Shown here: in pieces, positions 10,532 to 59,218 of the stretch
How the letters are laid out: each line of letters opens with the position of its first letter
How positions within the stretch are numbered: the first letter of the stretch is position 1
From: Octopus sinensis
Taxonomy: Eukaryota
Reading direction: 5' to 3'
Assembly (NCBI RefSeq): GCF_006345805.1
Contig: NC_043009.1
Coordinates: 71,424,001 to 71,488,000 of the forward strand
Length of the DNA stretch: 64,000 bases
Translations under genes and position numbers: made by a program
Notes under the pieces: generated by a model
What the model was told of the DNA's origin: nothing
The model's input: the letters and a program-made list of their open reading frames with translations, nothing else
Databases searched by the model: none

Positions 10532-10547
10532 TTACTTGAACAGGAAA
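10532..10547 (-). CDS. TUSC3: TUSC3/MAGT1 terminal coding exon: (S)FLFK-stop
   Basis: Acceptor tttttccgctgtctttttcAG followed by T TTC CTG TTC AAG TAA; gives YPYSFLFK*, like the YPYSFLIK/YPYSFLMS endings of the family. Short, so less certain. Confidence 0.8.
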
Positions 10548-16762: not shown

Positions 16763-16853
16763 CTATAAGGATAACCATGATACTTGGAACGGAAAATGGA
16801 TAGCAATAAACTGAAAAAGAAGGCCACACAGCCTACTCCTACCAATGCCATAA
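16763..16853 (-). CDS. TUSC3: TUSC3/MAGT1 exon 9: (I)[29 protein letters not shown](S)
   Basis: 91 nt, phase 1 to 2; acceptor ctcttctatttttcAG, donor GTACGT; conserved [12 protein letters not shown] motif. Confidence 0.97.
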
Positions 16854-18762: not shown

Positions 18763-18837
18763 TTTTTTTCTTGCCTGGATCACCTTTTAAATTATTAGCT
18801 TCATTAAGTAGAATGAAACCTATCACAACAGCAGCAT
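18763..18837 (-). CDS. TUSC3: TUSC3/MAGT1 exon 8: (N/Y)AAVVIGFILLNEANNLKGDPGKKK(I)
   Basis: 75 nt, phase 1 to 1; acceptor CCCTTAAC-ttcgtctcAG (U12 branch site, no long pyrimidine tract), donor GTAAGT; matches [24 protein letters not shown]. Confidence 0.95.
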
Positions 18838-18847
18838 CTGAGACGAA

Positions 18848-18855
18848 GTTAAGGG
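18848..18855 (-). promoter_or_regulatory. U12-type branch site CCCTTAAC upstream of exon 8
   Basis: CCTTAAC core, 10 nt (ttcgtctcAG) from the 3' splice site, the spacing typical of U12 introns. Confidence 0.9.
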
Positions 18856-27335: not shown

Positions 27336-27546
27336 TCCAAATTAATAATTACAACAACAACAACAATAATGAGAAAAAATGAAGGAAAGAGTTGAAGATG
27401 TGAAGAAGAATGAACCTTGTTGGAAAGATTTAAACATAAAAGAGAATGGAAACTCGAAAGGAAGAAATGAAATTTTGATAATGAAACAAAATGGGGGGAC
27501 AGGGGGGATGGAAACAAACAAACAAACAAAAATGTAAGAGCAACCG

Positions 27547-27555
27547 AAAAGATAC
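27547..27555 (-). promoter_or_regulatory. U12-type 5' splice site GTATCTTTT of exon 7B
   Basis: GTATC core with C-to-T at +6, a tolerated U12 variant; homologous position to the 7A donor. Confidence 0.8.
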
Positions 27556-27619
27556 AGTTAAAAAATATAATATAGGACTCTGCAACAAACTGCAGTTCAA
27601 ATGATGGAACGATGAACTG
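27556..27619 (-). CDS. TUSC3: TUSC3/MAGT1 exon 7B, putative mutually exclusive paralog of 7A: QFIVPSFELQFVAESYIIFFN(Y)
   Basis: Exactly 64 nt, same phases, open frame; acceptor atttcttttatttttcAG, donor GTATCTTTT. Aligns without gaps to 7A (7/21 identical: I,S,Q,F,V,E,Y; QFVAESY core); T+AT gives Tyr with exon 8. Not in the ORF track; transcript support is unknown. Confidence 0.85.
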
Positions 27620-30600
27620 CTGAAAAATAAAAGAAATTCAACAGAAGGTTCAAAATATACAAAAAAATATCAAGATATGACAAAGCAATAACTAACATGT
27701 GCCAAACAGAAGGTTAAGAGACATGCGAGGGGGGGGGTTCTTTGTCTCTCTCTTCTCCACACCATTTTTTTGTATATGGGAATAACAATCATTAGCAGAA
27801 AGCCAGATGCAAATAAAATATGAGAAAGAATATAAAGTGAAACCAAGCAAAAATGGGGTGAAAAAGATTGCAATATATGTCAATGCTGAGATGAAAAAAA
27901 AGGAAAAAGAAGAGCAGCATAACCAGTGAGAAGAAGAAGAAGAAGAAGAAGGAGAGAAAAAGAGCAAACGAGCTAAACTGGAATCAATTATGAAAACAAT
28001 CAAGCAAAGAAGAAATTTTTTTTTGTCTCTTTCCTAATAATCTATTGTTGATAGAGAATGGACAAAGGATTCCTAAATCAAAGCAGATTTCAGGAACATA
28101 GAATTATAAAAACAGAAAGAAAAATATTGTTTTTCTTCCCTTTTTTCTTTTTTTTTTTTTTAAAGAAATATTTCCACAAAATGTCTCTGACTGTAGATAA
28201 TTTCTTAAATTAGACAATAAAGATTTTAGCTGAAACGGTAGAAAGAACAATAAAAAGAATGGGGAAAATTATGAAAGAAAAAAAACAAAAAAAAAACGAA
28301 GGAAATCAGTCAAGTGTGGAAATGAGTGAGTTGGAAGAAAGACTAACAGATTTCATACTCTATGAACAAATTAGAATTAAGTTAACGAAGATATAAAAAT
28401 AAGAAAAGGAAAACAATCAAAAATCCAGGTGAGTCAATATGTTGGTCAGGACAAAAAAAAAGTCTTTGCAGGAAGTAAAAACAGTTTTCAGTGTAAATAA
28501 GAGCAGATAGCAAACTAGTTTTCAATTAAATACATTCAGCTATTTAATTAGGAGTTAAGAACCATTCCACATGATCAAAAGATAATGCATGCTAATTCTA
28601 CAGAAGTAAAACATGCAGCTCTACCCAATAAATTCAGTTTATAAAAGAAAATGTAGAAAGACTGGTGCTATGGATACCAATGCTATGTGATGCCTGAGTT
28701 TTTTCAATTATTTGAACATTTAATAACTTATCTTCAATTTTCATGCCAAACAAGGGAGAAAATTTCAAAGCTCTGGAGCAGATAACAAAAGCTGTTATAA
28801 TCTCTCAAAAAATTAACTCTCAGACTAACCTGAAAAATTGAATGCTGTTGGAATATAATTTGCTTGCAACAATAAGCCACATTTTTTTAAATGTCATTTG
28901 ATTCAAAATTCATGAGAGATGAGATAATGAAGGAGACGACGACGTTAACAGGCAAATGACCATCAAATCCATTTCGTGGTAAAAGATGATAAAATTCTGC
29001 TACACAGGAAGGGCTTTTGCTTACAGCTTATGTCAACTAAAAGAAGGAACAATCAAAAGAAACAAAGGGGCTGCTGCTGAGAGCAAGAATCGTCATCATC
29101 ATCAATGGCTGCTTAGGAGAGAATTGCTACTGCAAGTGGTGGAGATATCTATTTATATAATCAGACCGTCCGTCCGTCAGATAAGCAGACATATGTCTTT
29201 AGACAAACAAAATCACACAAGAATGGCTTCAACCAGGGTCGACTCTGGAAATTACTGGAAAAAATAACAGGCCTCATAAGTGGTAAAAACTAGGCATTGG
29301 TGAGAGGAAGCAGAAACACACACACACACACACACACACACCCACAGCAGCTGACTTTATGGGTAGTGATGGCCATGATGCTAATAATACTCAGTCTTTC
29401 CTGTTCCAGAAACACAAAAGAAACAAAAAATCAATACTAGTAGGCAAAACAAAATAATCAATCAATTCTTTTTCACCAGAATTCTTTGTATTATTTTTTT
29501 AGAAGAAAAAAGGCAATTTAGCAAAATAGCTTTGAAACGAAGTTGGGGTGGGGGTGGAAGTGGGTAAAACATAAAAGGTTTAATTAACTCAAACAGTTAT
29601 GTTGAAAATTAAATTTAAGAAAGAAACTTTAGCAATTACATTTGAATATTCTTTTTACTACATCAAAAATAATTTCATGTTTTTAAAACCTTACAAATAT
29701 AATGTTATTAATACAATTAAACTCTTTTTATTTTAACATTAGCAACAAACAAACGAAAACAAGCATTTTTTTTCTCTCTCCTAAGCTTGGAACTTTTACT
29801 TTGGTTAAGTAGAGACGTTATGTCCATTCACAAAGAACATAAGCATTTTGAATGAAACGTGGAACAACTTAGAAACCAAAACTGGTTCACTGACTCATCT
29901 CAGAATCTTACAGATTCTGAGATGTTATATTGATAGGGTTTTCTTTCAGAGGTGTACACTACATTTACATTTAATTAAATATAGAAACAACAACAAAAAT
30001 GTTCTTGTTTGTTTTTTTTTTAATCAAAATTAGGATTTCCTTCAAAATTAAAATTAAAACCAAAGTAAAATTAAAGAAAATTTGTTGAATAATCTACAAG
30101 ACAATTTTTAAGAACCAAATCTCTAACTCAGTGAGATTTTACTTAAAATCTTTTGAGTACTAAACTAGACATAGCGAAACAGCTAATCCAGTGCTCAAGC
30201 ATGAGGGGCCCCTTTGGCTGATGCTGAGATAGAAATACTTAACAAAAAATAATATTCATGAGAGTCTCGTCTAGCATTGGCTAAAAGTTCGTTAATTTCA
30301 AGAGAACAGTTGATTATATAAACCTCAGTATTTGTCTGTGTACTACAAACCCAAGGAAAATTCATCTGAGCAGGACTTGAACTCAAAACTTTGGGGAACC
30401 ATAACTTTGTAGTCCAGAAGTTCATTTTGTAAGCATGCAGTGTTGGGTTCAGTCCCACAGTGCAGAACCTAAGGCGAGTGTCTTGGGAAACAAAAAGCTG
30501 CATTCAGCTCATCGTGAGTGCATGCGTGCATGCAAATGTGCATGTATGTTGATACTGCACTTGTCACCATTTCAGTGAAACAGCGATAATGTTGACATTC

Positions 30601-32024
30601 TTTGTTGCCCTTCTGATTGGTTGCTCTACACTCTCAAAGACCTTTGAAATATAAAAATCGTTTCTCTGAAAAACAGGTGAGGGCTGGCAGCAGGAAGGTC
30701 AGCCAGTCACATTTTCTGACCTCAAATCAATTCTCATCCAACCCATACAAGCATGGGAAACAGAGGTTAAGTGAACGAACAAAGAAAGAATGAACACAAA
30801 TGGATCTCTGAGACATTGGCAGACTGAAAATTGTGGATGTGTTGAGTGATGTAAAGAAGGAAAGGAATTCTGAAGAGAGTTTCATCCTTCCAGCAATGAA
30901 AAAAATCAAATGATTAAAAGAATACACAATACAAAGTGAAACCAGAACAAGAGAATGAAAGAACCTGAAGACATTCTAGGTTGGATGCCAACAATGGATT
31001 GTCCTGACAATAAATTGTCTTTGGACAAACGAATGGCTAATGAATTGTCTCACCACCATGGACAAAGGGTTTTACTGATGTAAAGTAGTTCAGTTGGATG
31101 CAGAATTCTTTTGTTTTCTTCTTCTTCTTCTTCTTCTTTGATTACTCAGATTTATGTGACTACCTGACAGCCAACAGGTTTCACTCCCTGCTTCATAGCT
31201 GAGTTGTTAGAGATAAGAAGATCCCCCCCCCCCGCCACTGCCCTCTGTCCCAGCAGCTGTAAAAGTAAAGTGCTACAACAAAATCGTTCAACTCAATGAA
31301 AAGAAAATAATTAATTACAGCTCAGGTGAGTGTATTCACCTGATAAAAGATATCATTGATTGTATTCGATAACACAATAACAGTCGTATAACATTTTTTC
31401 TGCTTTTGTTGCCGATAATGAACAAGTATTAAAAAATAAACATTTCTTATTCAAGATAAATAACAACAATGAAAATGGTTTCTGATTAAGGTACAAGACA
31501 TGTAATTTTGAGTGGAAGGGCTTTAGCCAACACCTTTAGCCAACACCCTCAACTCCAGGACTCAACTGGTACTTTATTTTATTGAGAGATGAAAGGTAAA
31601 GTCAACAAGCTGACAACAGAATTTGAACTCAGAACATAAAGAGCTGGAATCAAATACTGCTTGGATGATTCTGCCAGCTGACTGCCAGGAGGAGGAGGAG
31701 GAGTAGGAAGTAAATCTGTTTGTTTGTTTGTGTGTGTGTGGGGGGGGGTATGTATGTATGTATGTATGTATGTGGGTATGTATGTATGTGGGTATGTATG
31801 GATATATTGCAATGGCATAGAAAATATTTCAACTGGAGAGAACAAACTGATGCAGTAAATTCCAGCCAAAAGCCTTGTGAAGGATGAAAGAAATGTCAGA
31901 GAGTGGAGGGAAGAAAAAAAGAAATGCACAAATATTATAATAAAAAAAAAGAACAAAATAATAGAGCAATTAGGAGGAGAAAGAGAGAGTGTGACAATGT
32001 GAGCAGCAATGAGTGAGTTGGTTA

Positions 32025-32033
32025 AAAGGATAC
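32025..32033 (-). promoter_or_regulatory. U12-type (minor spliceosome) 5' splice site GTATCCTTT of exon 7A
   Basis: Exact match to the established U12 GT-AG donor consensus RTATCCTTT at the exon boundary. Confidence 0.9.
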
Positions 32034-32097
32034 TCAGGCACATAACTAAGTAAGTTTCCACTACAAACTGGCCCTGACTGCTACCATGGATATAATG
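32034..32097 (-). CDS. TUSC3: TUSC3/MAGT1 exon 7A (canonical-type): HYIHGSSQGQFVVETYLVMCL(N)
   Basis: 64 nt, phase 0 to 1; acceptor gtttttgcattgcAG, donor GTATCCTTT (U12 consensus). Matches SYIHGSSQAQFVAE of human TUSC3/MAGT1; A+AT gives Asn with exon 8. Confidence 0.95.
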
Positions 32098-33286
32098 CTG
32101 CAATGCAAAAACATTTAGGGCTCAGTTACAGAATGCAGTTGAAAGCTAGAATGAATTTAAGGGCAAAAGTACATAAATAAAAAAAAAACCTTTGAATTTA
32201 AATGATTTCAGCTGGAACAAAAACAGGGTAAACAGAGATGACATTTGCTGGATCCTGATTCCATTCAAGCACCACCACCCTTTTTTGTTCTTCCTTTCTT
32301 TCTTTTGGGACTGCATACATCATTAAGAGAGAGAAAAGAAAAGACTACTAGTGACGAACAGGCAACTAATTATCTAATAATGCAGTGACCACTACACATG
32401 TAACATTGCGTTTTCTTTCTTTCCCATTCACTAAAGTTGTAACAGTCACTGGAAAAAGCCTACTTTACTCTGGACAGGAAATGTAATCTCTGTTTACTCA
32501 GCGTATGTATAAACACATTTCAGACACTAGCTTCTAATACTTGTTTGCAATGGACTCTTGTATATTTTCAGATCACAAAGTAAACAAAAAGAAAACTTTG
32601 TATGCAGTCAAGCCTTTCTGAAAACTCAAGTTGCCAATGTTTTGCTACAAGAGTGAAACCTCATCCAGATTCCAGAATTGTTACCCTAATTGTTGCTGTT
32701 TGGTTCAAAGCCAACCTTCAAGCAGAATATGATCAAAGACTTTCTTCCCATCGTTCACATATCCCAAGCTACCGTGTGTCAATGTGACCTTCTTTGTTTA
32801 AAGCAGTTGGCGGTGATTTGGAAGGGATTTTGACAAGCGGTTCAAGTAGAATGAATTTATCATTCACAATAACCCCATTCACCCTACACAGGACAAACAT
32901 TACATAACAAGAGTTCATATGCTTCTAATAGAAAGCCCTACCAAGCATTTTTCTGTTTCTTATACCATAATATAAAATTTAAAAAAAACAATATATAATA
33001 TTAGTATAATGATGCATGCATGAGACAACGGTGTATATGTTGTGATGTGAACCAAAAACTTCAACAAGATTTAAAAAGGTCAAATACAGAACTCATTAAA
33101 CAGATTATAATCAATACAAACTCAATTATTGATTCGAAAGTCAAAAATGATCCACAAACAACAGACATGAATATAATTGGCAAAATACAAAAAAAACATT
33201 CAGAAAAACAACAAAATTCTTTTGTACAAATTACATTTGAAGCAAATGTATGTAATTATCTCTAAAAACAACTGACATACAAAACA

Positions 33287-41970: not shown

Positions 41971-44702
41971 AGACAATTTACGCAACAAATACATCTCTTA
42001 ACAATTTGTTTCTGGAAACCATTTTTGTGGATCCATACACCTGGGTATGACTGAATATTTTCAAATGAACATACACTTTACATACGTAACAGGCTTCTTT
42101 CAGTTTCCATCTCCCAAAGCCATGGGCTACAGAAGAACACATTTGGCCAAAGCAGACTGCAGCAGGACTGAACCCCAAAGCCAAACAGTTGGAATGCAAG
42201 TCACTTGACCACATGTCCAACGGCCAGAGTGCAACGAGGCTGGAACAAGGAAAGGAAGTCATACAAAAACACAAACACACATTCATATGCCCATTTGTGT
42301 GTGTGTATAGAGCTGTAGCTATGAATGGACAGGTGGAGAGGGAGAGGTAGATATGGAAAGACAGAGTGAGAGAGAGAGAGAGAGAGAGAGAGTGATAAAG
42401 AGACAGAGTGATAGAGAGACAGAGTGATAGAGAGACGAATAGAGATATATAAAAAGACAGACAGAGTGATAAGGAGACAGAGGGACAGACACATATCTGT
42501 ATTAGAGTCCTTTGTTCTAGTTTATAACTAAATGCAAAAAGGTGAAGGTCAGTCATAACTAGGGCAGACAAAGTTGGGAGGAAATGGGAGAGCAATATTG
42601 TTGTTATTATTATTATTATTATTATTATCATTAAAACTAGAAGCAAGAGTTATTAAAAAAACGTTACTATAGTAACTCCCAAGTCACAAAACTAATGTCA
42701 TTTTGTAAACTCGTTGGCTGGAAAATTAAATATCCCATTTAATGTCTTTTATTTACAGACCACCCCCTCTCTCTCAATCTATATATATAGATATATATAG
42801 ATATATATATATATATATAGATATTATAAAGAGAGTTTGTGTTTGTGCGTGTGTGTATGTTCCTTAAGCATTCAAAATGTGAGTTGCTGATTTTGACGTA
42901 TGGAGGAGTATCAAGAGATTCAGTAATCTTTCGGCAACCAAATAAACTGTTTTTGGCACAACAACTCTTGTTTATTACTAAAATAACCTCTGAAACAAAG
43001 TCAGGTCACACAATTTTGAGATCATTTTCAGGCAATATTTCGATTTGCTTCTATGTTTCACTTTCGTCCGATGCTTAATGCATGAATAGAATTCTACTCA
43101 GACAAACATTTATGAAAATGTATCCATAAATATGGTATCAAAATAAGCCACAACCAAAAAAGTTTCATTAAAAGACATCCATTATTCTATATGTCATAAA
43201 GAAATACACTCTCTCTCTCACTCACATGCACACAAAAAAAATGTATGCACATGTATTTTTGTACGTGTATATGAAAGATAATGTGTTAGAGAGAGAGAGA
43301 GAGAGTGAGTGAGTGCCATTTACATGCAAAAAAATACACAACAACACACATCTTCACTCACTTACTCTCTCTCTCTCTCACATACACACATCCATACATC
43401 CTTCACTTTCTGCTCTCACTTCAAAGCAAATGTTGTCTTTTCATTTTCTCTTCTCTTTCAATTTCTGCTTTCTTCAAAGGATAAAGAAATAAAATTTTTT
43501 TCTGGAAATTAACGAACAATCATGATCCCATATGATTGAGTTTACAACGTTGCTGCTTCAAATGAAAGAATGCCATAAAATAACTTCCTTTCTCACACAC
43601 ACACACACACACTAGATAAAACTTCTGTGCAAATTATGATATTTCTTGTCGTGTGCATGTGCAAAATTACAGCTCAAATCCAATTGAAATGACATTTTTC
43701 TATTCCGTAATTTGTTTGTGATGAGCATATTTGAAAACCTGATCTTCAGTATAAACTTAAAAGGAAATTTCCCAGAAATCCTGTCCTTTACCTGCTGTTT
43801 CTAGCATGTTCAAGGTGACATTTGCACTCCACCCCTTAGGTTTTTCCTTAATTTCTTTCAATTCCTATGTTTTCAATACAGGAGATTAGGATTTCACCCA
43901 AAAACCACGTTCTCAATTTTTTAATTTTCTCCCTCCCCACCCCAATTTTTTCATTTGTTTTACTTTTTTCCAAATATTTTTCTTGGTAATCCACAGAGAA
44001 AACAACAGAGAGTAGAAACTTTATGAATTTTCTTTTTTTCTTAAAGAAACACTAAAATTTCCTTCCCAACCATCCACCCATCACCTCCCAATGTTTCACT
44101 TTTAGCTTTCTGGAAAGCATGGAGGTTTCATCAGAAATAATATCATTTACCTGTTGTTTCTAGCATGTTGGGTTTTCTGATAGTGGTCTGGTATTTTTTA
44201 CGTCTGCTATTTCAGTAAAATTCTATGCATGAAAGATCAAATGAAAGTGAAACATTGGGATGTTTTAGCTTTTTGAAAGTGGGTAGGTGATGGGTGAGCA
44301 AGGTGAGGGAGGGGGCATTGAGGTTTCCTCAAGAAAAATTAAACAAAAATACAATATATATTTCCCAGATTCGTAATCTCTATTTTTCTACGTGGACAAA
44401 ACAAAAACAAAATTCGTAAAAATGTTACAAATTAAGAATATTTGTGGTTGGGTCAGGGGCAAATTAAAATTTTAAAAATGTGATTTCTGGGTAAAATCAT
44501 ATTAACGCCTTTTATACGATGAAACAAAATATAATTTGTGATCCTTCTTAAGAACAGAGAGCATTTTCATGCAAATTGTAACCCTCCCCACTGCCCCACT
44601 TCACTTCCATTCTGCCAGTAGGCCAGTTCCCTCTATATCAGCTGTGCCGATTCTGCCCAAAAGAAAGGAACAAATAATACAATGTGGCTGGAGGTCATGA
44701 CA

Positions 44703-45603
44703 CCCAGCCTTGCATAAACCTCCAATTCACATAGAGCCTGACATATTCTTTTATTTTCTTCTGTAACTTCTATGTCTCTTCCTCCAGGTTTCAGTTCATA
44801 TTCTCGTACTTGCCCAAAGGAATTGTGCTGCACACAGAAAGCCTGCTTCAGAACACTGTCAATATTATTCTCTAGGATCCAAACAAGGCTTCTGTGTAGT
44901 TCTGGGTCAACACTTTCTAAATCATCTAATGTGACAGGTTTGCCCAGAAGCTGTTTATAAAACGGCATGGTGAATCCTCCATCGATGTTGTGACCATGAA
45001 ATATTGCCATACCAATGATTCTTCCAACAAAATGGAAGGAGGATAAATGTTCAGGGTTGACAGCAGAATCTGGATTTATTTGTAAAGTATATATATCATC
45101 TCTTGAATACTGAAACAATCCATAATATGGATTAAGCATCTCATGAGATAATAGATATAACCATTCTCTAGCAACACCCCCATAATCTAAGCCTTCCTCA
45201 CTTCGAAACTTTACCATTAATCGTTTTCGTAAATCTTTAGACCTCATTTTTATGACTTGTCGATAAGATTCTTCAAATATTTCTCCTCTTGATACTTCCA
45301 ATTGACAATGACCAGCCTGAGGCTGAAGATCATTAAGTTGACGTCGTAACTCTTTCAGCTTTTGGACAAGGTCTCGCTTATATTTTGGTAAAGGCCCAGG
45401 CGCACTGTTCTCTTTATCAGCAATTTGCATTTTCTGTTGTATCAATCCAATATTGGCTGAGAGGCGAGGATCAGTGAACTGTGTCGTTCTATTGATATGG
45501 TTCACAAAATACATGTGTCCTGCTCCTGTGTATCTAATCTCCCAGCCTTGTGGCAACGGACCGAGTTCTTCTTCAGACACATTTGTAAGATCTCTTGGAA
45601 TGC
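44703..45603 (-). pseudogene. SMURF2: Processed, 5'- and 3'-truncated retrocopy of a SMURF1/2 HECT E3 ligase (last WW domain + HECT N-lobe)
   Basis: [92 protein letters not shown], uninterrupted over about 900 nt. A frameshift at EENK precedes [14 protein letters not shown]. No C2 domain and no catalytic C-lobe found. Confidence 0.9.
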
Positions 45604-45621: not shown

Positions 45622-47805
45622 TCATCATCATCATCATCATCATTTAGCGTCCGTTTTCCATGCTAGCATGGGTTGGACGGTTCTACTGGGGTCTGTGAAG
45701 CCAGAAGGCTTCATCAGGCCCAGTCAAATCTGGCAGTGTTTCTACGGCTGGATGCCCTTCCTAACACCAACCACTCCGTGAGTGTAGTGGGTGCTTTTTA
45801 CGTGCCACCCGCACTGGTGCCAGACAGAGCTGGCAAACGGCCACGAACGGATGGTGCTTTTTATGTGCCACCGGCACGAGGGCCAGGCGAGGCTGGCAAC
45901 GGACACGAAACGGGGCGGTGCTGGCAACGGTCGCGAAACGGAAAGTTCTCTTACATGCCACCGGCACTGGTAACACATCTGCAATTTCCATTGATCGATT
46001 TCCATTGATCGATTTCGATTCTGATCCTCACTTGCCTCAATGGGTCTTCACAAGCAGAGTTTCGACATGCCACCGGCACTGGTAGCACATCCGCAATTTC
46101 CATTGATCGATTTCGATTCTGATCCTCACTTGCCTCAACACGTCTTCACAAGTAGAGTTTTGTGTCCCAAGAAGGGAAGGTATGCATACGTAGGCTGGCT
46201 CCATCCCATGTAGAAGGCCACGGGTTGTGGACTCACTTGTCCTGCCGGGTCTTCTCGCGCACAGCACACTTCCAGAGGTCTCGGTCTCTAGTCATTTCCT
46301 CAGTGAGACCTAAAGTTCGAAGGTCGTGCTTCACCACCTCGTCCCAGGTTTTCCTGGGTCTGCCTCTTCCACAGGTTCCCTCAACCGCTAGGGTGTGGCA
46401 CTTTTTCACACAACTATCTTCATCCATTCTCGCCACATGACCATACCAGCGCAAACGTCTCTCTTGCACACCACAACTGATGCTTCTTAGGTCCAGCTTT
46501 TCTCTCAAGGTACTTACACTCTGCCGAGTGTGAGTACCGGCATTACACATCCATCGGAGCATACTGGCTTCATTTCTAGCGAGCTTACGCATATCCTCAG
46601 CAGTCACGGCCCATGTTTCACTGCCATGTAGCATGGCTGTTCGTACACACGCATCATACAGTCTGCCTTTCACTCTGTGCGAGAGGCCTTTTGTCACCAG
46701 CAGAGGTAAGAGCTCTCTGAACTTTGCCCAAGCTATTCTTACTCTAGCAGTTACACTTTCAGCACACCCACCCCCGCTGCTGACTTGGTCACCTAGGTAA
46801 CGGAAACTATCAACTATTTCTAGTTTTTCTCCCTGGAAAGTGACGGAAGTTGGTCTCAGAGCATTTTCAGTGTTTATTGTTCCTGAGCATCTGCCACATA
46901 CAAAAACCATCTTCCTAGTTAGCCTTCCTTTGACATTGCTGCATCTCTTATGTGTCCATAGCTTACACTTGGTGCATCTTATAGAGTTTCTACCTACACC
47001 TTTTCTACAGATCGAGCAGGGCCATCTACCTGAAGGTGTTTGTGATTTGTCTACCTTCCTACTGATTACGACTTTGGTTTTAGCTAGATTGACTCTGAGG
47101 CCCTTCGATTCTAATCCTTGTTTCCACACCTGAAACTTCTCCTCCAGTTCTGATAGCGACTCAGCAATTAGAGCAAGGTCATCAGCATAGAGGAGCTCCC
47201 AAGGGCATCCTGTCTTGAATTCCTCCGTTATTGCCTGGAGGACTATGATAAATAGGAGGGGGCTGAGTACTGAGCCTTGGTGGACCCCTACCTCTACCCG
47301 GAATTCTTCACTGTACTCATTTCCAACCCTCACCCTACTAGCGGCGTCCCTATACATGGCCCGCACAGCTCTCACTAACCATTCATCTATCCCTAGTTTT
47401 CTCATTGCCCACCAGATAAGGGATCGGGGGACCCTGTCGAAGGCTTTCTCCATGTCAACAAAAGCCAGGTACAGGGGCTTATCTTTGGCTAGGTATTTCT
47501 CCTGCAGCTGCCTTACCAGGAATATAGCATCAGTAGTACTTTTCCCTGGCACAAACCCAAACTGCATCTCATCTAAACTAACTCTCTCTCTAATTAGTTG
47601 GGCTATGACCCTCTCCGTAACCTTCATCACCTGGTCCAACAGCTTGATACCGCTGTAGTTATTTGTATCTAGGGCATCACCTTTACCTTTGTAGCAGTTG
47701 ACTATTATACTGCTACACCAGTCATTGGGTATGACCCCTTTGTGTATCACCTGATTAACTATATGGGTGACTAGGCTATAGCCGACACTACCAGACATTT
47801 TGAGC
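45622..47805 (-). mobile_element. Young 5'-truncated RTE-clade LINE: open 521-aa RT ORF (46233-47798), 3' UTR and (TGA)n tail
   Basis: RT motifs LAFVDMEKAFDRVP, GVHQGSVLSPLLF, LLYADDL, FRYLG, and RTE-type RRLRWYGHVARM..GRGRPRKTW; no endonuclease domain; tail ..ggacgctaaatgatgatgatg. Confidence 0.95.
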
Positions 47806-49937: not shown

Positions 49938-50027
49938 CATTTGGCCTGTGTGTGGATTTCTATGCATGAATGGAGGTCCTCGGATATGATTCCACATCTG
50001 ACCTGATGTCATTGCAAATATAATGAT
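49938..50027 (-). CDS. TUSC3: TUSC3/MAGT1 exon 6: [30 protein letters not shown]
   Basis: 90 nt; acceptor ttcttctcctcAG, donor GTAAGA; invariant [12 protein letters not shown] motif of OST3/OST6 proteins. Confidence 0.97.
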
Positions 50028-52613: not shown

Positions 52614-52754
52614 CATAGCTCCAAATCCCCATGATGTTTTGTTGTACAAAAAGTCTAAGTTATTTCTTTTTAAATATAGCAGACCACCAACCAGAGAGAA
52701 AAGTAATGCAACAGCCAAGGTTCCAGAGTAATTGGGTGGACGGAATACTCGAAT
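52614..52754 (-). CDS. TUSC3: TUSC3/MAGT1 exon 5: [47 protein letters not shown]
   Basis: 141 nt; long polypyrimidine tract + AG, donor GTAAGT; phase 0 to 0. Hallmark IRVFRPPNY and first TM helix; visible inside ORF-track 52581..52823. Confidence 0.97.
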
Positions 52755-56240: not shown

Positions 56241-56298
56241 CTGAATATCCGTTCTCTCACCAACCCATCTTGCAATTAATTCTGCAGCAAATCCAACT
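56241..56298 (-). CDS. TUSC3: TUSC3/MAGT1 exon 4b: (R)VGFAAELIARWVGERTDIQ
   Basis: 58 nt; acceptor tttcctttattccAG, donor GTAACT. CG+A joins to Arg in frame with exon 4a; matches GFAAEQLAKWIADRTDV. Confidence 0.95.
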
Positions 56299-59135: not shown

Positions 59136-59218
59136 CGATGTATATCCATTGTATCTCCTTTCCTTGGCTTCCCTTTTGGTGGAAAATGCATGAAGACAGG
59201 AGCTGTGTTGATTTTTAA
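59136..59218 (-). CDS. TUSC3: TUSC3/MAGT1 (OST3/OST6 family) coding exon 4a, thioredoxin-like domain end: [27 protein letters not shown](R)
   Basis: 83 nt; acceptor tttttttgtAG, donor GTATTA; phase 0 to 2. Translation matches human TUSC3 [28 protein letters not shown] as recalled. Upstream exons were not found in the window. Confidence 0.95.

What the first reader, a model, noticed from the sequence alone, without database searches (positions are those of the whole stretch)
27556..32097. Hidden duplicated exon 7 (7A/7B) in TUSC3/MAGT1: a candidate mutually exclusive exon pair
Seen: two 64-nt, phase 0-to-1 exons 4.4 kb apart align without gaps, 7A HYIHGSSQGQFVVETYLVMCL and 7B QFIVPSFELQFVAESYIIFFN. 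Both join exons 6 and 8 in frame. Four of the seven identical residues use different codons (AGC/TCA, GTA/GTT, GAA/GAG, TAC/TAT), while length, frame and splice signals are intact; this suggests an old duplicate under selection rather than a decayed copy. Using both or neither shifts the frame. I know of no described MXE at this exon in OST3/OST6-family genes, but could not search the literature.
Basis: partly seen in the sequence, partly recalled or inferred. Interest (0 to 1): 0.95.

Follow-up and report, generated by a model that had tools for sequence, protein, structure and literature searches.

The report
Octopus TUSC3 alternative exon pair
The octopus gene for an N-glycosylation helper protein (TUSC3/MAGT1, OST3/6 family) has two real, conserved alternative copies of one 64-base exon; both copies end in a minor-spliceosome (U12-type) splice site, the same wiring that forces a one-or-the-other choice in vertebrate JNK genes.

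Summary
Exons 7A (32097-32034) and 7B (27619-27556, minus strand) are both 64 nt, run from phase 0 to phase 1, have AG/GT flanks, and join the neighbouring exons in frame. Using both or neither gives early stop codons.

The pair is not hidden. The window is Octopus sinensis, and RefSeq already lists isoform X1 (7A) and X2 (7B). O. bimaculoides, O. vulgaris and the cuttlefish Acanthosepion pharaonis have the same kind of annotation. No paper in the searched library describes it.

7B is conserved in Argonauta, where the flanking introns cannot be aligned. A B-type exon is spliced into cuttlefish mRNA contigs.

Both exons end in /GTATCCTTTT or /GTATCTTTTC, a U12-type 5' splice site. Exon 8 is preceded by a CCTTAAC branch site 11-14 nt upstream. 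Exon 6 has a U2-type donor, and 7A and 7B have U2-type acceptors. The intron between 7A and 7B is therefore a U12/U2 hybrid that neither spliceosome should remove, as in JNK exons 6a/6b.

Chiton and tubeworm have a single exon 7 followed by the same U12 intron.

Shared derived bases suggest one duplication before octopods and cuttlefish split, yet exon order is A-B in octopods and B-A in cuttlefish.

Verdict: a new member of a known kind, of moderate interest.

The parts
49938..50027 (-). Its donor /GTAAGAGT is U2-type.
32098..32137 (-). 3' end of the exon 6-to-7A intron. U2-type acceptor (...aaatgtttttgcattgcag), no CCTTAAC branch motif. The last 17 nt are conserved in cuttlefish.
32034..32097 (-). 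Exon 7A, 64 nt, phase 0 to 1, HYIHGSSQGQFVVETYLVMCL. It carries the canonical YIHGSSQ motif found across animals.
32024..32033 (-). U12-type 5' splice site of 7A, /GTATCCTTTT.
27620..32033 (-). [quoted passage not shown] Predicted not to be spliceable by either spliceosome.
   Evidence: JNK2 precedent in PMC1874599
27556..27619 (-). Exon 7B, 64 nt, phase 0 to 1, QFIVPSFELQFVAESYIIFFN. It follows a strong polypyrimidine acceptor (tttcttttatttttcag).
27546..27555 (-). U12-type 5' splice site of 7B, /GTATCTTTTC. It has T instead of C at +6 and is identical in O. bimaculoides and Argonauta.
18848..18855 (-). U12-type branch-site motif CCCTTAAC, with the branch A 11 nt before the 3' splice site of exon 8. 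CCTTAAC sits in the same place in all four cephalopods.
18763..18837 (-). Constitutive exon 8 (AAVVIGFILLNEANNLKGDPGKKK). The split codon reads N after 7A and Y after 7B.
16763..16853 (-). Next constitutive exon ([29 protein letters not shown]).
10532..10547 (-). Coding start of the last exon (completes S, then FLFK and the stop codon).
52614..52754 (-). Constitutive exon ([11 protein letters not shown]...GFGAM), first transmembrane helix.
56241..56298 (-). Constitutive exon (VGFAAELIARWVGERTDIQ).
59136..59218 (-). Constitutive exon ([27 protein letters not shown]). Earlier exons lie beyond the window end, in L006.

Best explanation
The gene is the Octopus sinensis TUSC3/MAGT1 orthologue, the OST3/OST6-type thioredoxin subunit of oligosaccharyltransferase. 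One 64-nt exon was duplicated in tandem together with its U12-type 5' splice site. This exon encodes the end of the loop between transmembrane helices 2 and 3 and the first half of helix 3.

The inferred splicing logic is as follows. The U2-type donor of exon 6 can pair only with the U2-type acceptors of 7A or 7B, and not with the U12-type 3' end before exon 8. The U12-type donor of whichever exon is chosen can pair only with the U12-type branch site and 3' splice site of exon 8, and not with the U2-type acceptor of 7B. So double inclusion and double skipping are both disfavoured at the splicing step. Any leak is frame-shifted into early stops and is probably removed by nonsense-mediated decay. 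The choice is therefore made at the two competing U2-type acceptors.

The result is two subunit isoforms with the same thioredoxin domain but different membrane-proximal segments. Isoform A keeps the universal YIHGSSQ motif and isoform B lacks it. This is a single-gene counterpart of the Ost3/Ost6 (yeast) and TUSC3/MAGT1 (vertebrate) paralogue pairs. The duplication most likely predates the split of octopods and cuttlefish.

Shown directly: the exon anatomy, the splice motifs, conservation, the annotated isoforms, cuttlefish B-type mRNA, and the ancestral single-exon state. Inferred: that the minor spliceosome removes the downstream intron, that the incompatibility enforces exclusivity, and what the two isoforms do differently.
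For: Identity of the gene:
- PF04756 matches the locus, and the best solved structure is human MAGT1 in OST-B (6S7T chain H, E = 1e-140).

Isoforms:
- 7A and 7B proteins are annotated in O. sinensis, O. vulgaris and O. bimaculoides. A-type and B-type proteins are annotated in the cuttlefish.
- Cuttlefish RNA contigs L007 and L008 align to the genome as 11 exons, joining exon 6 to B to exon 8 and skipping A. A third contig, L015, also encodes a B-type protein.

Selection:
- Between Octopus and Argonauta, the only syntenic alignable blocks in the interval are exon 6, 7A, 7B with its flanks (132 nt, 84%) and exon 8.
- 7B differs at 4 synonymous and 2 conservative replacement codons. 7A differs at 5 synonymous codons only.

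U12 features:
- The donors are /GTATCCTTTT (A exons and cuttlefish B) and /GTATCTTTTC (octopod B) in all four cephalopods.
- CCTTAAC lies with its branch A 11-14 nt before exon 8 in all four.
- These motifs occur only 2-3 times in each 20-31 kb interval.
- The exon 6 donors are GTAAGA, GTGAGT and GTAGGA.
- The A and B acceptors have polypyrimidine tracts and no CCTTAAC near the splice site.
- U12 snRNA (126.6 bits) and U6atac snRNA (96.9 bits) genes are present in this genome.

Ancestral state:
- Chiton and tubeworm have one 64-nt exon with an A|GTATCCTT donor and a CTTAAC or CCTTGAC branch site.
- Read-through fragments from many animals end in ...SIL, which is the translation of A|GTATCCTT.
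- Human TUSC3 and MAGT1 are listed as minor-intron genes (PMC7507305).

Precedent: the JNK2 exon 6a/6b hybrid intron, proposed to have arisen by duplication of an exon lying between a U2 and a U12 intron (PMC1874599).

Single origin of the B exons: at 21 sites where both B types differ from invariant A sites, 13 share the same base (P = 0.007). These include Gly to Pro, the serine codon switch AGC to TCA, and retention of the outgroup codon ATT where cephalopod A exons have TTA.
Against: - No read-level RNA evidence for 7B in an octopus could be reached. Two searches for octopus fragments carrying 7B found none. The RefSeq X2 models are computational.
- The octopod 7B donor departs from the U12 consensus at +6 (T for C).
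- U12 dependence is read from motifs only. No scoring matrix trained on known U12 introns was applied.
- The frame shift alone could account for observing only single-exon coding mRNAs.
- Exon order is A-B in octopods but B-A in cuttlefish (no assembly gaps in the cuttlefish interval). A single ancient duplication does not explain this without a further rearrangement, and no relic third copy was found.
- One cuttlefish model (P0019) contains both exons, joined through a cryptic GT 11 nt after the B donor.
- The AlphaFold model of isoform B is unreliable (pLDDT 43.5), so the structural placement rests on alignment to MAGT1 and on a review.
Confidence: 0.72

Rival explanations
1. 7B is a real alternative exon, but exclusivity comes only from the reading frame. 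Transcripts with both or neither exon are made and then destroyed by nonsense-mediated decay. The GTATC donors would be weak U2-type sites, not U12 sites.
For: 64 nt is not a multiple of 3, and both aberrant combinations give early stops. In human MXE clusters, frame incompatibility is far more common than U2/U12 incompatibility (60% against 0.79% of clusters; PMC5740500). The octopod 7B donor has T at +6.
Against: The ten-base donor motif is conserved at both exons in four cephalopods, and also in chiton and tubeworm. It is paired with a CCTTAAC branch site at the distance typical of U12 introns. As U2 donors these sites lack both -1G and +5G. Human orthologues are catalogued as minor-intron genes.
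Confidence: 0.12
2. The octopod 7B and the cuttlefish B-type exon arose by two independent duplications of exon 7, one in each lineage. Their resemblance would be convergence or retained ancestral states.
For: The exon order is opposite: A-B in three octopods and B-A in cuttlefish. The two B peptides share only 10 of 21 residues and 34/64 nt. No flanking intron similarity between them was detected.
Against: At 13 of the 21 sites where both B types differ from invariant A sites, they carry the same base (P = 0.007). This includes a two-base Gly to Pro change and a three-base serine codon switch. Both B types keep the outgroup codon ATT where all cephalopod A exons have TTA, which puts the duplication before the A-lineage change shared by both orders.
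Confidence: 0.15
3. 7B is a decaying or unused pseudo-exon that annotation pipelines picked up by homology. It would have no biological role in octopus.
For: No octopus transcript contig with 7B was found in the searchable collections. 7B lacks the otherwise universal YIHGSSQ motif.
Against: The frame, length, acceptor and ten-base donor are intact in three octopod genomes. Substitutions are mostly synonymous or conservative, while the neighbouring intron is saturated. The orthologous B-type exon is the form found in three cuttlefish RNA assemblies.
Confidence: 0.04
4. Exclusivity is directed by competing intronic RNA pairings (a docking site and selector sequences), as in insect Dscam or mammalian ATE1.
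For: Argonauta has complementary microsatellite blocks of about 120 nt upstream of 7A and just upstream of 7B. O. sinensis has (CTT)n/(AAG)n arms inside the hybrid intron.
Against: These pairings are simple repeats and differ in each species. No conserved non-coding block exists in the interval apart from the exon flanks.
Confidence: 0.04

Closest known systems
JNK/MAPK8-10 exons 6a/6b (U2-U12 hybrid intron)
   Same: Two homologous tandem exons. The upstream intron is U2-type, both alternative exons carry a U12-type 5' splice site, the downstream intron is U12-type, and the intron between them has a U12 5' end and a U2 3' end. Relatives with a single exon have a U2 intron before it and a U12 intron after it, which fits an origin by duplication of the exon plus its flanks (PMC1874599).
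   Different: A different gene family and phylum, so an independent origin. The exons here are 64 nt and also break the frame. The hybrid intron is 4.4-8.7 kb. Exon order differs between octopods and cuttlefish. Nothing has been tested experimentally here.
Tandem-exon-duplication MXEs in general (e.g. CACNA1C 8/8a, SNAP25, ATE1 7a/7b)
   Same: Equal length and phase, homologous peptides that replace the same structural segment (here a loop plus half a transmembrane helix), and ancient conservation (PMC8373072, PMC5740500).
   Different: Most such pairs rely on steric hindrance, RNA structure or frame. U2/U12 incompatibility was found in only 5 of 629 human clusters. TUSC3 and MAGT1 are not named in the main text of either human survey.
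Ost3/Ost6 (yeast) and TUSC3/MAGT1 (vertebrates) paralogue pairs
   Same: Alternative, mutually exclusive OST3/6-type subunits of one oligosaccharyltransferase complex (PMC7226087). The octopus protein aligns to MAGT1 end to end.
   Different: Here the alternatives come from one gene and differ in only 21-22 residues of the membrane part. The thioredoxin domain is the same in both. Functional divergence is untested.

Membership tests
Mutually exclusive exon pair from tandem exon duplication | Two neighbouring exons of the same length and phase lie between the same constitutive exons. | tested here: met
   Both are 64 nt, phase 0 to 1, and lie between exon 6 (49938) and exon 8 (18837). The same holds in three other cephalopods.
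Mutually exclusive exon pair from tandem exon duplication | The encoded peptides are homologous beyond chance. | tested here: met
   7B is the only splice-flanked candidate that scores well against 7A (30, next best 5) and against non-cephalopod exon 7 peptides (31.7). About 0.008 such candidates are expected by chance.
Mutually exclusive exon pair from tandem exon duplication | Mature mRNAs contain exactly one of the two exons. | tested here: inconclusive
   Annotated octopus proteins carry either 7A or 7B. Cuttlefish mRNA contigs carry B only. No octopus read-level data could be reached. One cuttlefish model joins both exons through a cryptic donor.
Mutually exclusive exon pair from tandem exon duplication | Both copies are under purifying selection. 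| tested here: met
   Octopus against Argonauta: 7A has 5 synonymous and 0 replacement codon changes, and 7B has 4 synonymous and 2 conservative replacements. The introns cannot be aligned. 63 nt is too short for a formal dN/dS estimate.
U12-type (minor spliceosome) intron, GT-AG subtype | The 5' splice site matches /RTATCCTT. | tested here: met
   7A and both cuttlefish exons match 8/8. Octopod 7B matches 7/8 (GTATCTTT) and is invariant over ten bases in three octopods.
U12-type (minor spliceosome) intron, GT-AG subtype | A branch site TCCTTAAC lies about 10-15 nt from the 3' splice site. | tested here: met
   The motifs are CCCTTAAC, TCCTTAAC and TTCCTTAAC, with the branch A 11-14 nt before exon 8 in all four cephalopods.
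U12-type (minor spliceosome) intron, GT-AG subtype | The organism has minor-spliceosome snRNAs. | tested here: met
   U12 at 126.6 bits and U6atac at 96.9 bits, both above the Rfam gathering scores, in G000.
U12-type (minor spliceosome) intron, GT-AG subtype | Removal of the intron depends on U11/U12/U4atac/U6atac. | not testable with these tools
   This needs knock-down or in vitro splicing experiments.
JNK-type U2-U12 hybrid-intron switch | The upstream intron is U2-type at both ends. The intron between the alternatives has a U12 5' splice site and a U2 3' end. | tested here: met
   The exon 6 donor is GTAAGA. The 7A and 7B acceptors have polypyrimidine tracts and no CCTTAAC within 25 nt. 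The cuttlefish B acceptor has a TACTAAC U2 branch site. This is a reading of sequence motifs only.
JNK-type U2-U12 hybrid-intron switch | Changing the splice-site type abolishes exclusivity. | not testable with these tools
   This needs a minigene experiment.
OST3/OST6 family (PF04756) | A profile match over the thioredoxin domain and four transmembrane helices, with a CxxC motif. | tested here: met
   PF04756 hits the exons. The protein aligns with MAGT1 (6S7T_H) over residues 10-338 at E = 1e-140, and with the TUSC3 luminal domain (4M8G) at 5e-72. The motif CTVC is present.

The most novel reading that the evidence does not exclude
Coleoid cephalopods independently evolved the same splicing switch as vertebrate JNK genes. 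They duplicated an exon that sits immediately upstream of an ancient U12 intron. The resulting U12/U2 hybrid intron blocks joining of 7A to 7B, and the U2 donor of exon 6 cannot use the U12-type 3' end of exon 8, so one of two OST3/6 subunit variants must be chosen. The cassette has been kept for the whole of coleoid history while its exon order was turned over. This would make exon duplication next to a U12 intron a recurrent, ready-made route to strict mutual exclusivity. It would also give cephalopods two oligosaccharyltransferase flavours from one gene.
Probability: 0.6. Interest if true: 0.6.

Novelty: new member of a known kind. Interest (0 to 1): 0.5.

Why it matters
Spliceosome incompatibility is the textbook but very rare way to enforce mutually exclusive splicing. 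JNK is the standard example, and only 5 of 629 human clusters show it (PMC5740500). An independent invertebrate case with the ancestral single-exon state still visible in chiton and annelid would show the mechanism is a predictable outcome of duplicating an exon next to a U12 intron. It also offers a natural system for studying it.

For glycobiology, it suggests that cephalopods diversify the OST3/6 subunit by splicing in the membrane segment. A review (PMC7226087) reports that in yeast Ost3 this part contacts Stt3 and, in docking, the translocon. Yeast and vertebrates diversify the same subunit by gene duplication instead.

The existence of the two isoforms is not new, because they are already in RefSeq.

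Tried and rejected
1. A 70-nt block shared by octopus (window 42792-42860) and cuttlefish looked like a conserved intronic element. It is a (CA)n(TA)n microsatellite.
2. I searched for a third or relic copy that could explain the opposite exon order. tblastn, enumeration of splice-flanked candidates and an nhmmer profile found nothing. The one exception was a weak hit (E = 0.016) just upstream of 7A in O. sinensis that is absent from O. bimaculoides, so I treat it as chance.
3. I asked whether two other PF04756 hits in the genome (C1794, C9) were retrocopies that would record which exon the mRNA used. They are only about 27% identical or do not align at all, so they are not retrocopies of this gene.
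4. I looked for octopus transcript fragments carrying 7B with 124-aa and 60-aa queries. None was found.
5. An inverted-repeat search for docking and selector RNA pairings returned only species-specific simple repeats.
6. An AlphaFold2 model of isoform B from a 13-sequence alignment had mean pLDDT 43.5. It is too poor to use, so no fold search was run.
7. The Priapulus orthologue is intronless and therefore uninformative.
8. Supplementary tables that might name the U12 intron of human TUSC3 and MAGT1 are not held in the library.
9. An Rfam scan of the window found nothing.


Full report
**What is at the coordinates.** On the minus strand, 32097-32034 and 27619-27556 are two 64-nt segments. Each is preceded by AG and followed by GT. 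They translate in the frame set by the upstream exon as HYIHGSSQGQFVVETYLVMCL (7A) and QFIVPSFELQFVAESYIIFFN (7B).

A probe-based exon map gives the following minus-strand exons in the window: 59218-59136, 56298-56241, 52754-52614, 50027-49938, then 7A and 7B, then 18837-18763, 16853-16763, and a last exon starting at 10547. Earlier exons lie just beyond the window. With either exon the reading frame is continuous. With both or neither, stops appear within a few codons.

Nucleotide identity is only 27/64.

**Is it more than chance?** The 31-kb interval between the flanking exons holds 47 open 64-nt segments with AG and GT flanks. Scored against 7A, 7B gets 30 and the next best gets 5. Against non-cephalopod exon 7 peptides, 7B gets 31.7 and the rest score about zero or below. 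About 0.008 such candidates are expected by chance. O. bimaculoides, Argonauta hians and a cuttlefish each show exactly one such runner-up.

**Identity of the gene and genome.** The locus matches Pfam OST3_OST6. The assembled protein aligns over its whole length to human MAGT1 in the OST-B cryo-EM structure (6S7T chain H, E = 1e-140) and to the TUSC3 luminal domain. The window's contig length (72,296,471 bp) equals that recorded for the Octopus sinensis RefSeq proteins. The only other PF04756 matches in the genome are weak and interrupted by stops.

**The exon is not hidden.** A region-restricted protein search and a cluster look-up show that both forms are already annotated:

| Species | 7A / A-type | 7B / B-type |
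|---|---|---|
| O. sinensis | XP_029643992.1 (X1) | XP_029643993.1 (X2) |
| O. sinensis, with a 4-nt alternative donor at exon 8 | X3 | X4 |
| O. vulgaris | CAI9732339.1 | CAI9732340.1 |
| O. bimaculoides | XP_014768237.1 | XP_014768238.1 |
| Acanthosepion pharaonis (cuttlefish) | CAE1157579.1 | CAE1157581.1 (ALIYPSNSSQFVFETWIIIFL) |

Two Logan RNA assemblies (SRR30931883 and SRR30931880) hold contigs that align to the cuttlefish genome as 11 exons. They join exon 6 to B to exon 8 and skip the A exon. A third run (SRR8281693) also yields a B-type protein. I found no octopus transcript fragments carrying 7B in the searchable collections. For octopus, the RNA-level evidence is therefore the computational RefSeq and GenBank models only.

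**Conservation.** I fetched the loci of O. bimaculoides, Argonauta and the cuttlefish. All eight exons are 64 nt with intact flanks.

- Between Octopus and Argonauta, the only syntenic alignable blocks in the interval are exon 6, 7A, 7B with about 24 nt upstream and 45 nt downstream (84% over 132 nt), and exon 8. All other hits are dispersed repeats.
- 7A differs at five synonymous codons.
- 7B differs at four synonymous and two conservative replacement codons (I to L, I to V).
- 7B is thus constrained about as much as the constitutive exons.

Every A and B exon ends in /GTATCCTTTT (the A exons and cuttlefish B) or /GTATCTTTTC (octopod B). This is the extended consensus of U12-type 5' splice sites and a very poor U2 donor.

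Exon 8 is preceded in all four species by CCTTAAC, with the branch A 11-14 nt from the 3' splice site. This is the U12 branch-site consensus at its characteristic distance. These motifs occur only two or three times in each 20-31 kb interval.

In contrast, exon 6 has ordinary U2 donors (GTAAGA, GTGAGT, GTAGGA). The acceptors of A and B have polypyrimidine tracts and no CCTTAAC near the splice site. The cuttlefish B acceptor even has a TACTAAC U2 branch site. The genome encodes U12 and U6atac snRNAs.

**Ancestral state.** Chiton (Liolophura) and tubeworm (Lamellibrachia) have a single 64-nt exon 7 with an A|GTATCCTT donor and a CTTAAC or CCTTGAC branch site before exon 8. Neither has a second candidate exon. 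Many read-through fragments from other animals end in ...SIL, which is the translation of A|GTATCCTT. Human TUSC3 and MAGT1 are catalogued as minor-intron genes (PMC7507305). I could not confirm that it is the same intron. Among about 140 family members inspected, only cephalopods have a B-type segment that lacks YIHGSSQ.

**Mechanism (inferred).** This is the architecture described for JNK2 exons 6a/6b. There, the intron between the alternatives has a U12 5' splice site and a U2 3' end and cannot be properly spliced. It was proposed to have arisen by duplication of an exon lying between a U2 and a U12 intron (PMC1874599).

- The U2 donor of exon 6 can use only the acceptor of 7A or of 7B.
- The chosen exon's U12 donor can use only the U12 3' end of exon 8.
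- Joining 7A to 7B, and joining exon 6 directly to exon 8, are both disfavoured.
- The frame shift provides a backstop.
- The regulated decision should therefore lie at the two U2 acceptors. In octopus, 7B has the stronger polypyrimidine tract (27 of 37 pyrimidines against 22 of 37).

Such incompatibility was found in only 5 of 629 human MXE clusters (PMC5740500).

**Protein consequence (inferred).** The exon corresponds to MAGT1 residues around 260-280. This is the end of the loop between helices 2 and 3 plus the first half of helix 3. A review reports that three Ost3 helices contact Stt3 helices 10, 11 and 13, that helix 2 lines the proposed lipid-linked-oligosaccharide pocket, and that helices 3 and 4 pack against Sec61 in docking (PMC7226087). 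Isoform B replaces the universal HGSSQ with VPSFE but keeps QFV-E and the hydrophobic pattern. My AlphaFold model was too poor to add anything.

**Age and an open puzzle.** The two B types share the same base at 13 of the 21 sites where both differ from invariant A sites (P = 0.007). These include the Gly to Pro change, the AGC to TCA serine switch, and retention of the outgroup codon ATT where all cephalopod A exons have TTA. This favours a single duplication before the octopod-decapod split.

Yet the order is A-B in three octopods and B-A in the cuttlefish, with no assembly gaps in the cuttlefish interval. No relic copies were found. A second cassette duplication followed by losses, or independent origins, remain possible.

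**Literature.** Searches combining mutually exclusive exons with TUSC3, MAGT1 or octopus, and two human surveys, returned no description of this pair.

**Verdict.** The isoforms are already annotated, and the U12/U2 wiring is the new point. This is a new member of a known kind, of moderate interest.

Noticed in passing
window 46233-47798 (-) and 44633-45580 (-): The intron between exon 6 and 7A holds a reverse-transcriptase ORF (RVT_1, 1.5e-30). Next to it is an uninterrupted ORF with a WW domain and the first half of a HECT domain (1.5e-32), which looks like a retro-copied NEDD4-like fragment. The HECT/WW ORF has no match in the O. bimaculoides, Argonauta or cuttlefish loci, which may help explain why this intron is 17.8 kb here and 8.5 kb in O. 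bimaculoides.
   Followed up: partly
L009 63796-72616 compared with window 32097-27556: The order of the two exon types is reversed between lineages. The cuttlefish has B then A, and the three octopods have A then B. There are no assembly gaps in the cuttlefish interval and no relic third copy.
   Followed up: partly
L010 35012-35160 and 42814-42942: In Argonauta, (CAC/CAT)n repeats of about 120 nt upstream of 7A are complementary to (GTG/ATG)n repeats ending about 20 nt before 7B (74-82% complementarity). Pairing would loop out 7A. The repeats are species-specific, so this may be coincidence.
   Followed up: no
window 27931-27960 and 31109-31138: Complementary (CTT)n and (AAG)n arms, 30 nt at 90% complementarity, lie inside the O. 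sinensis hybrid intron. They are low-complexity sequence and were not checked in other species.
   Followed up: no
window 18763-18755 (-): Exon 8 ends in a tandem donor, A|GTAA|GTAAAA. RefSeq isoforms X3 and X4 use the site 4 nt downstream, which shifts the frame and replaces the last transmembrane helix with [31 protein letters not shown].
   Followed up: partly
L009 63859-63870: The cuttlefish model CAE1157580.1 (507 aa) contains both exons in frame. It extends B by 11 nt (GTATCCTTTTA, read as SILL) to a cryptic GT and joins that to A. This is either a U2-type escape route around the hybrid intron or an annotation artefact.
   Followed up: no
G000:C1794:672314-672850 and G000:C9:30373940-30374359 (L001, L005): There are two further weak OST3_OST6 profile matches in the genome, both with in-frame stops. 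L001 is about 27% identical to the thioredoxin domain, and L005 does not align by tblastn. They are not retrocopies of this gene, and their nature is unknown.
   Followed up: partly
L014 1001-2005: The Priapulus caudatus TUSC3-like gene is a single uninterrupted ORF, so it is intronless. The chiton and tubeworm genes keep the multi-exon structure and the U12 intron.
   Followed up: no
proteins P0117, P0131, P0144: Read-through fragments from some other animals, including the fly Megaselia, continue after this exon as ...SE... (A|GTGAG) instead of ...SIL... (A|GTATCC). This suggests the U12 intron was converted to U2-type in some lineages.
   Followed up: no
G000, many contigs: More than 40 U6atac-like matches score above the Rfam gathering score in this genome, against only 3 for U12. 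This suggests many U6atac copies or pseudogenes.
   Followed up: no
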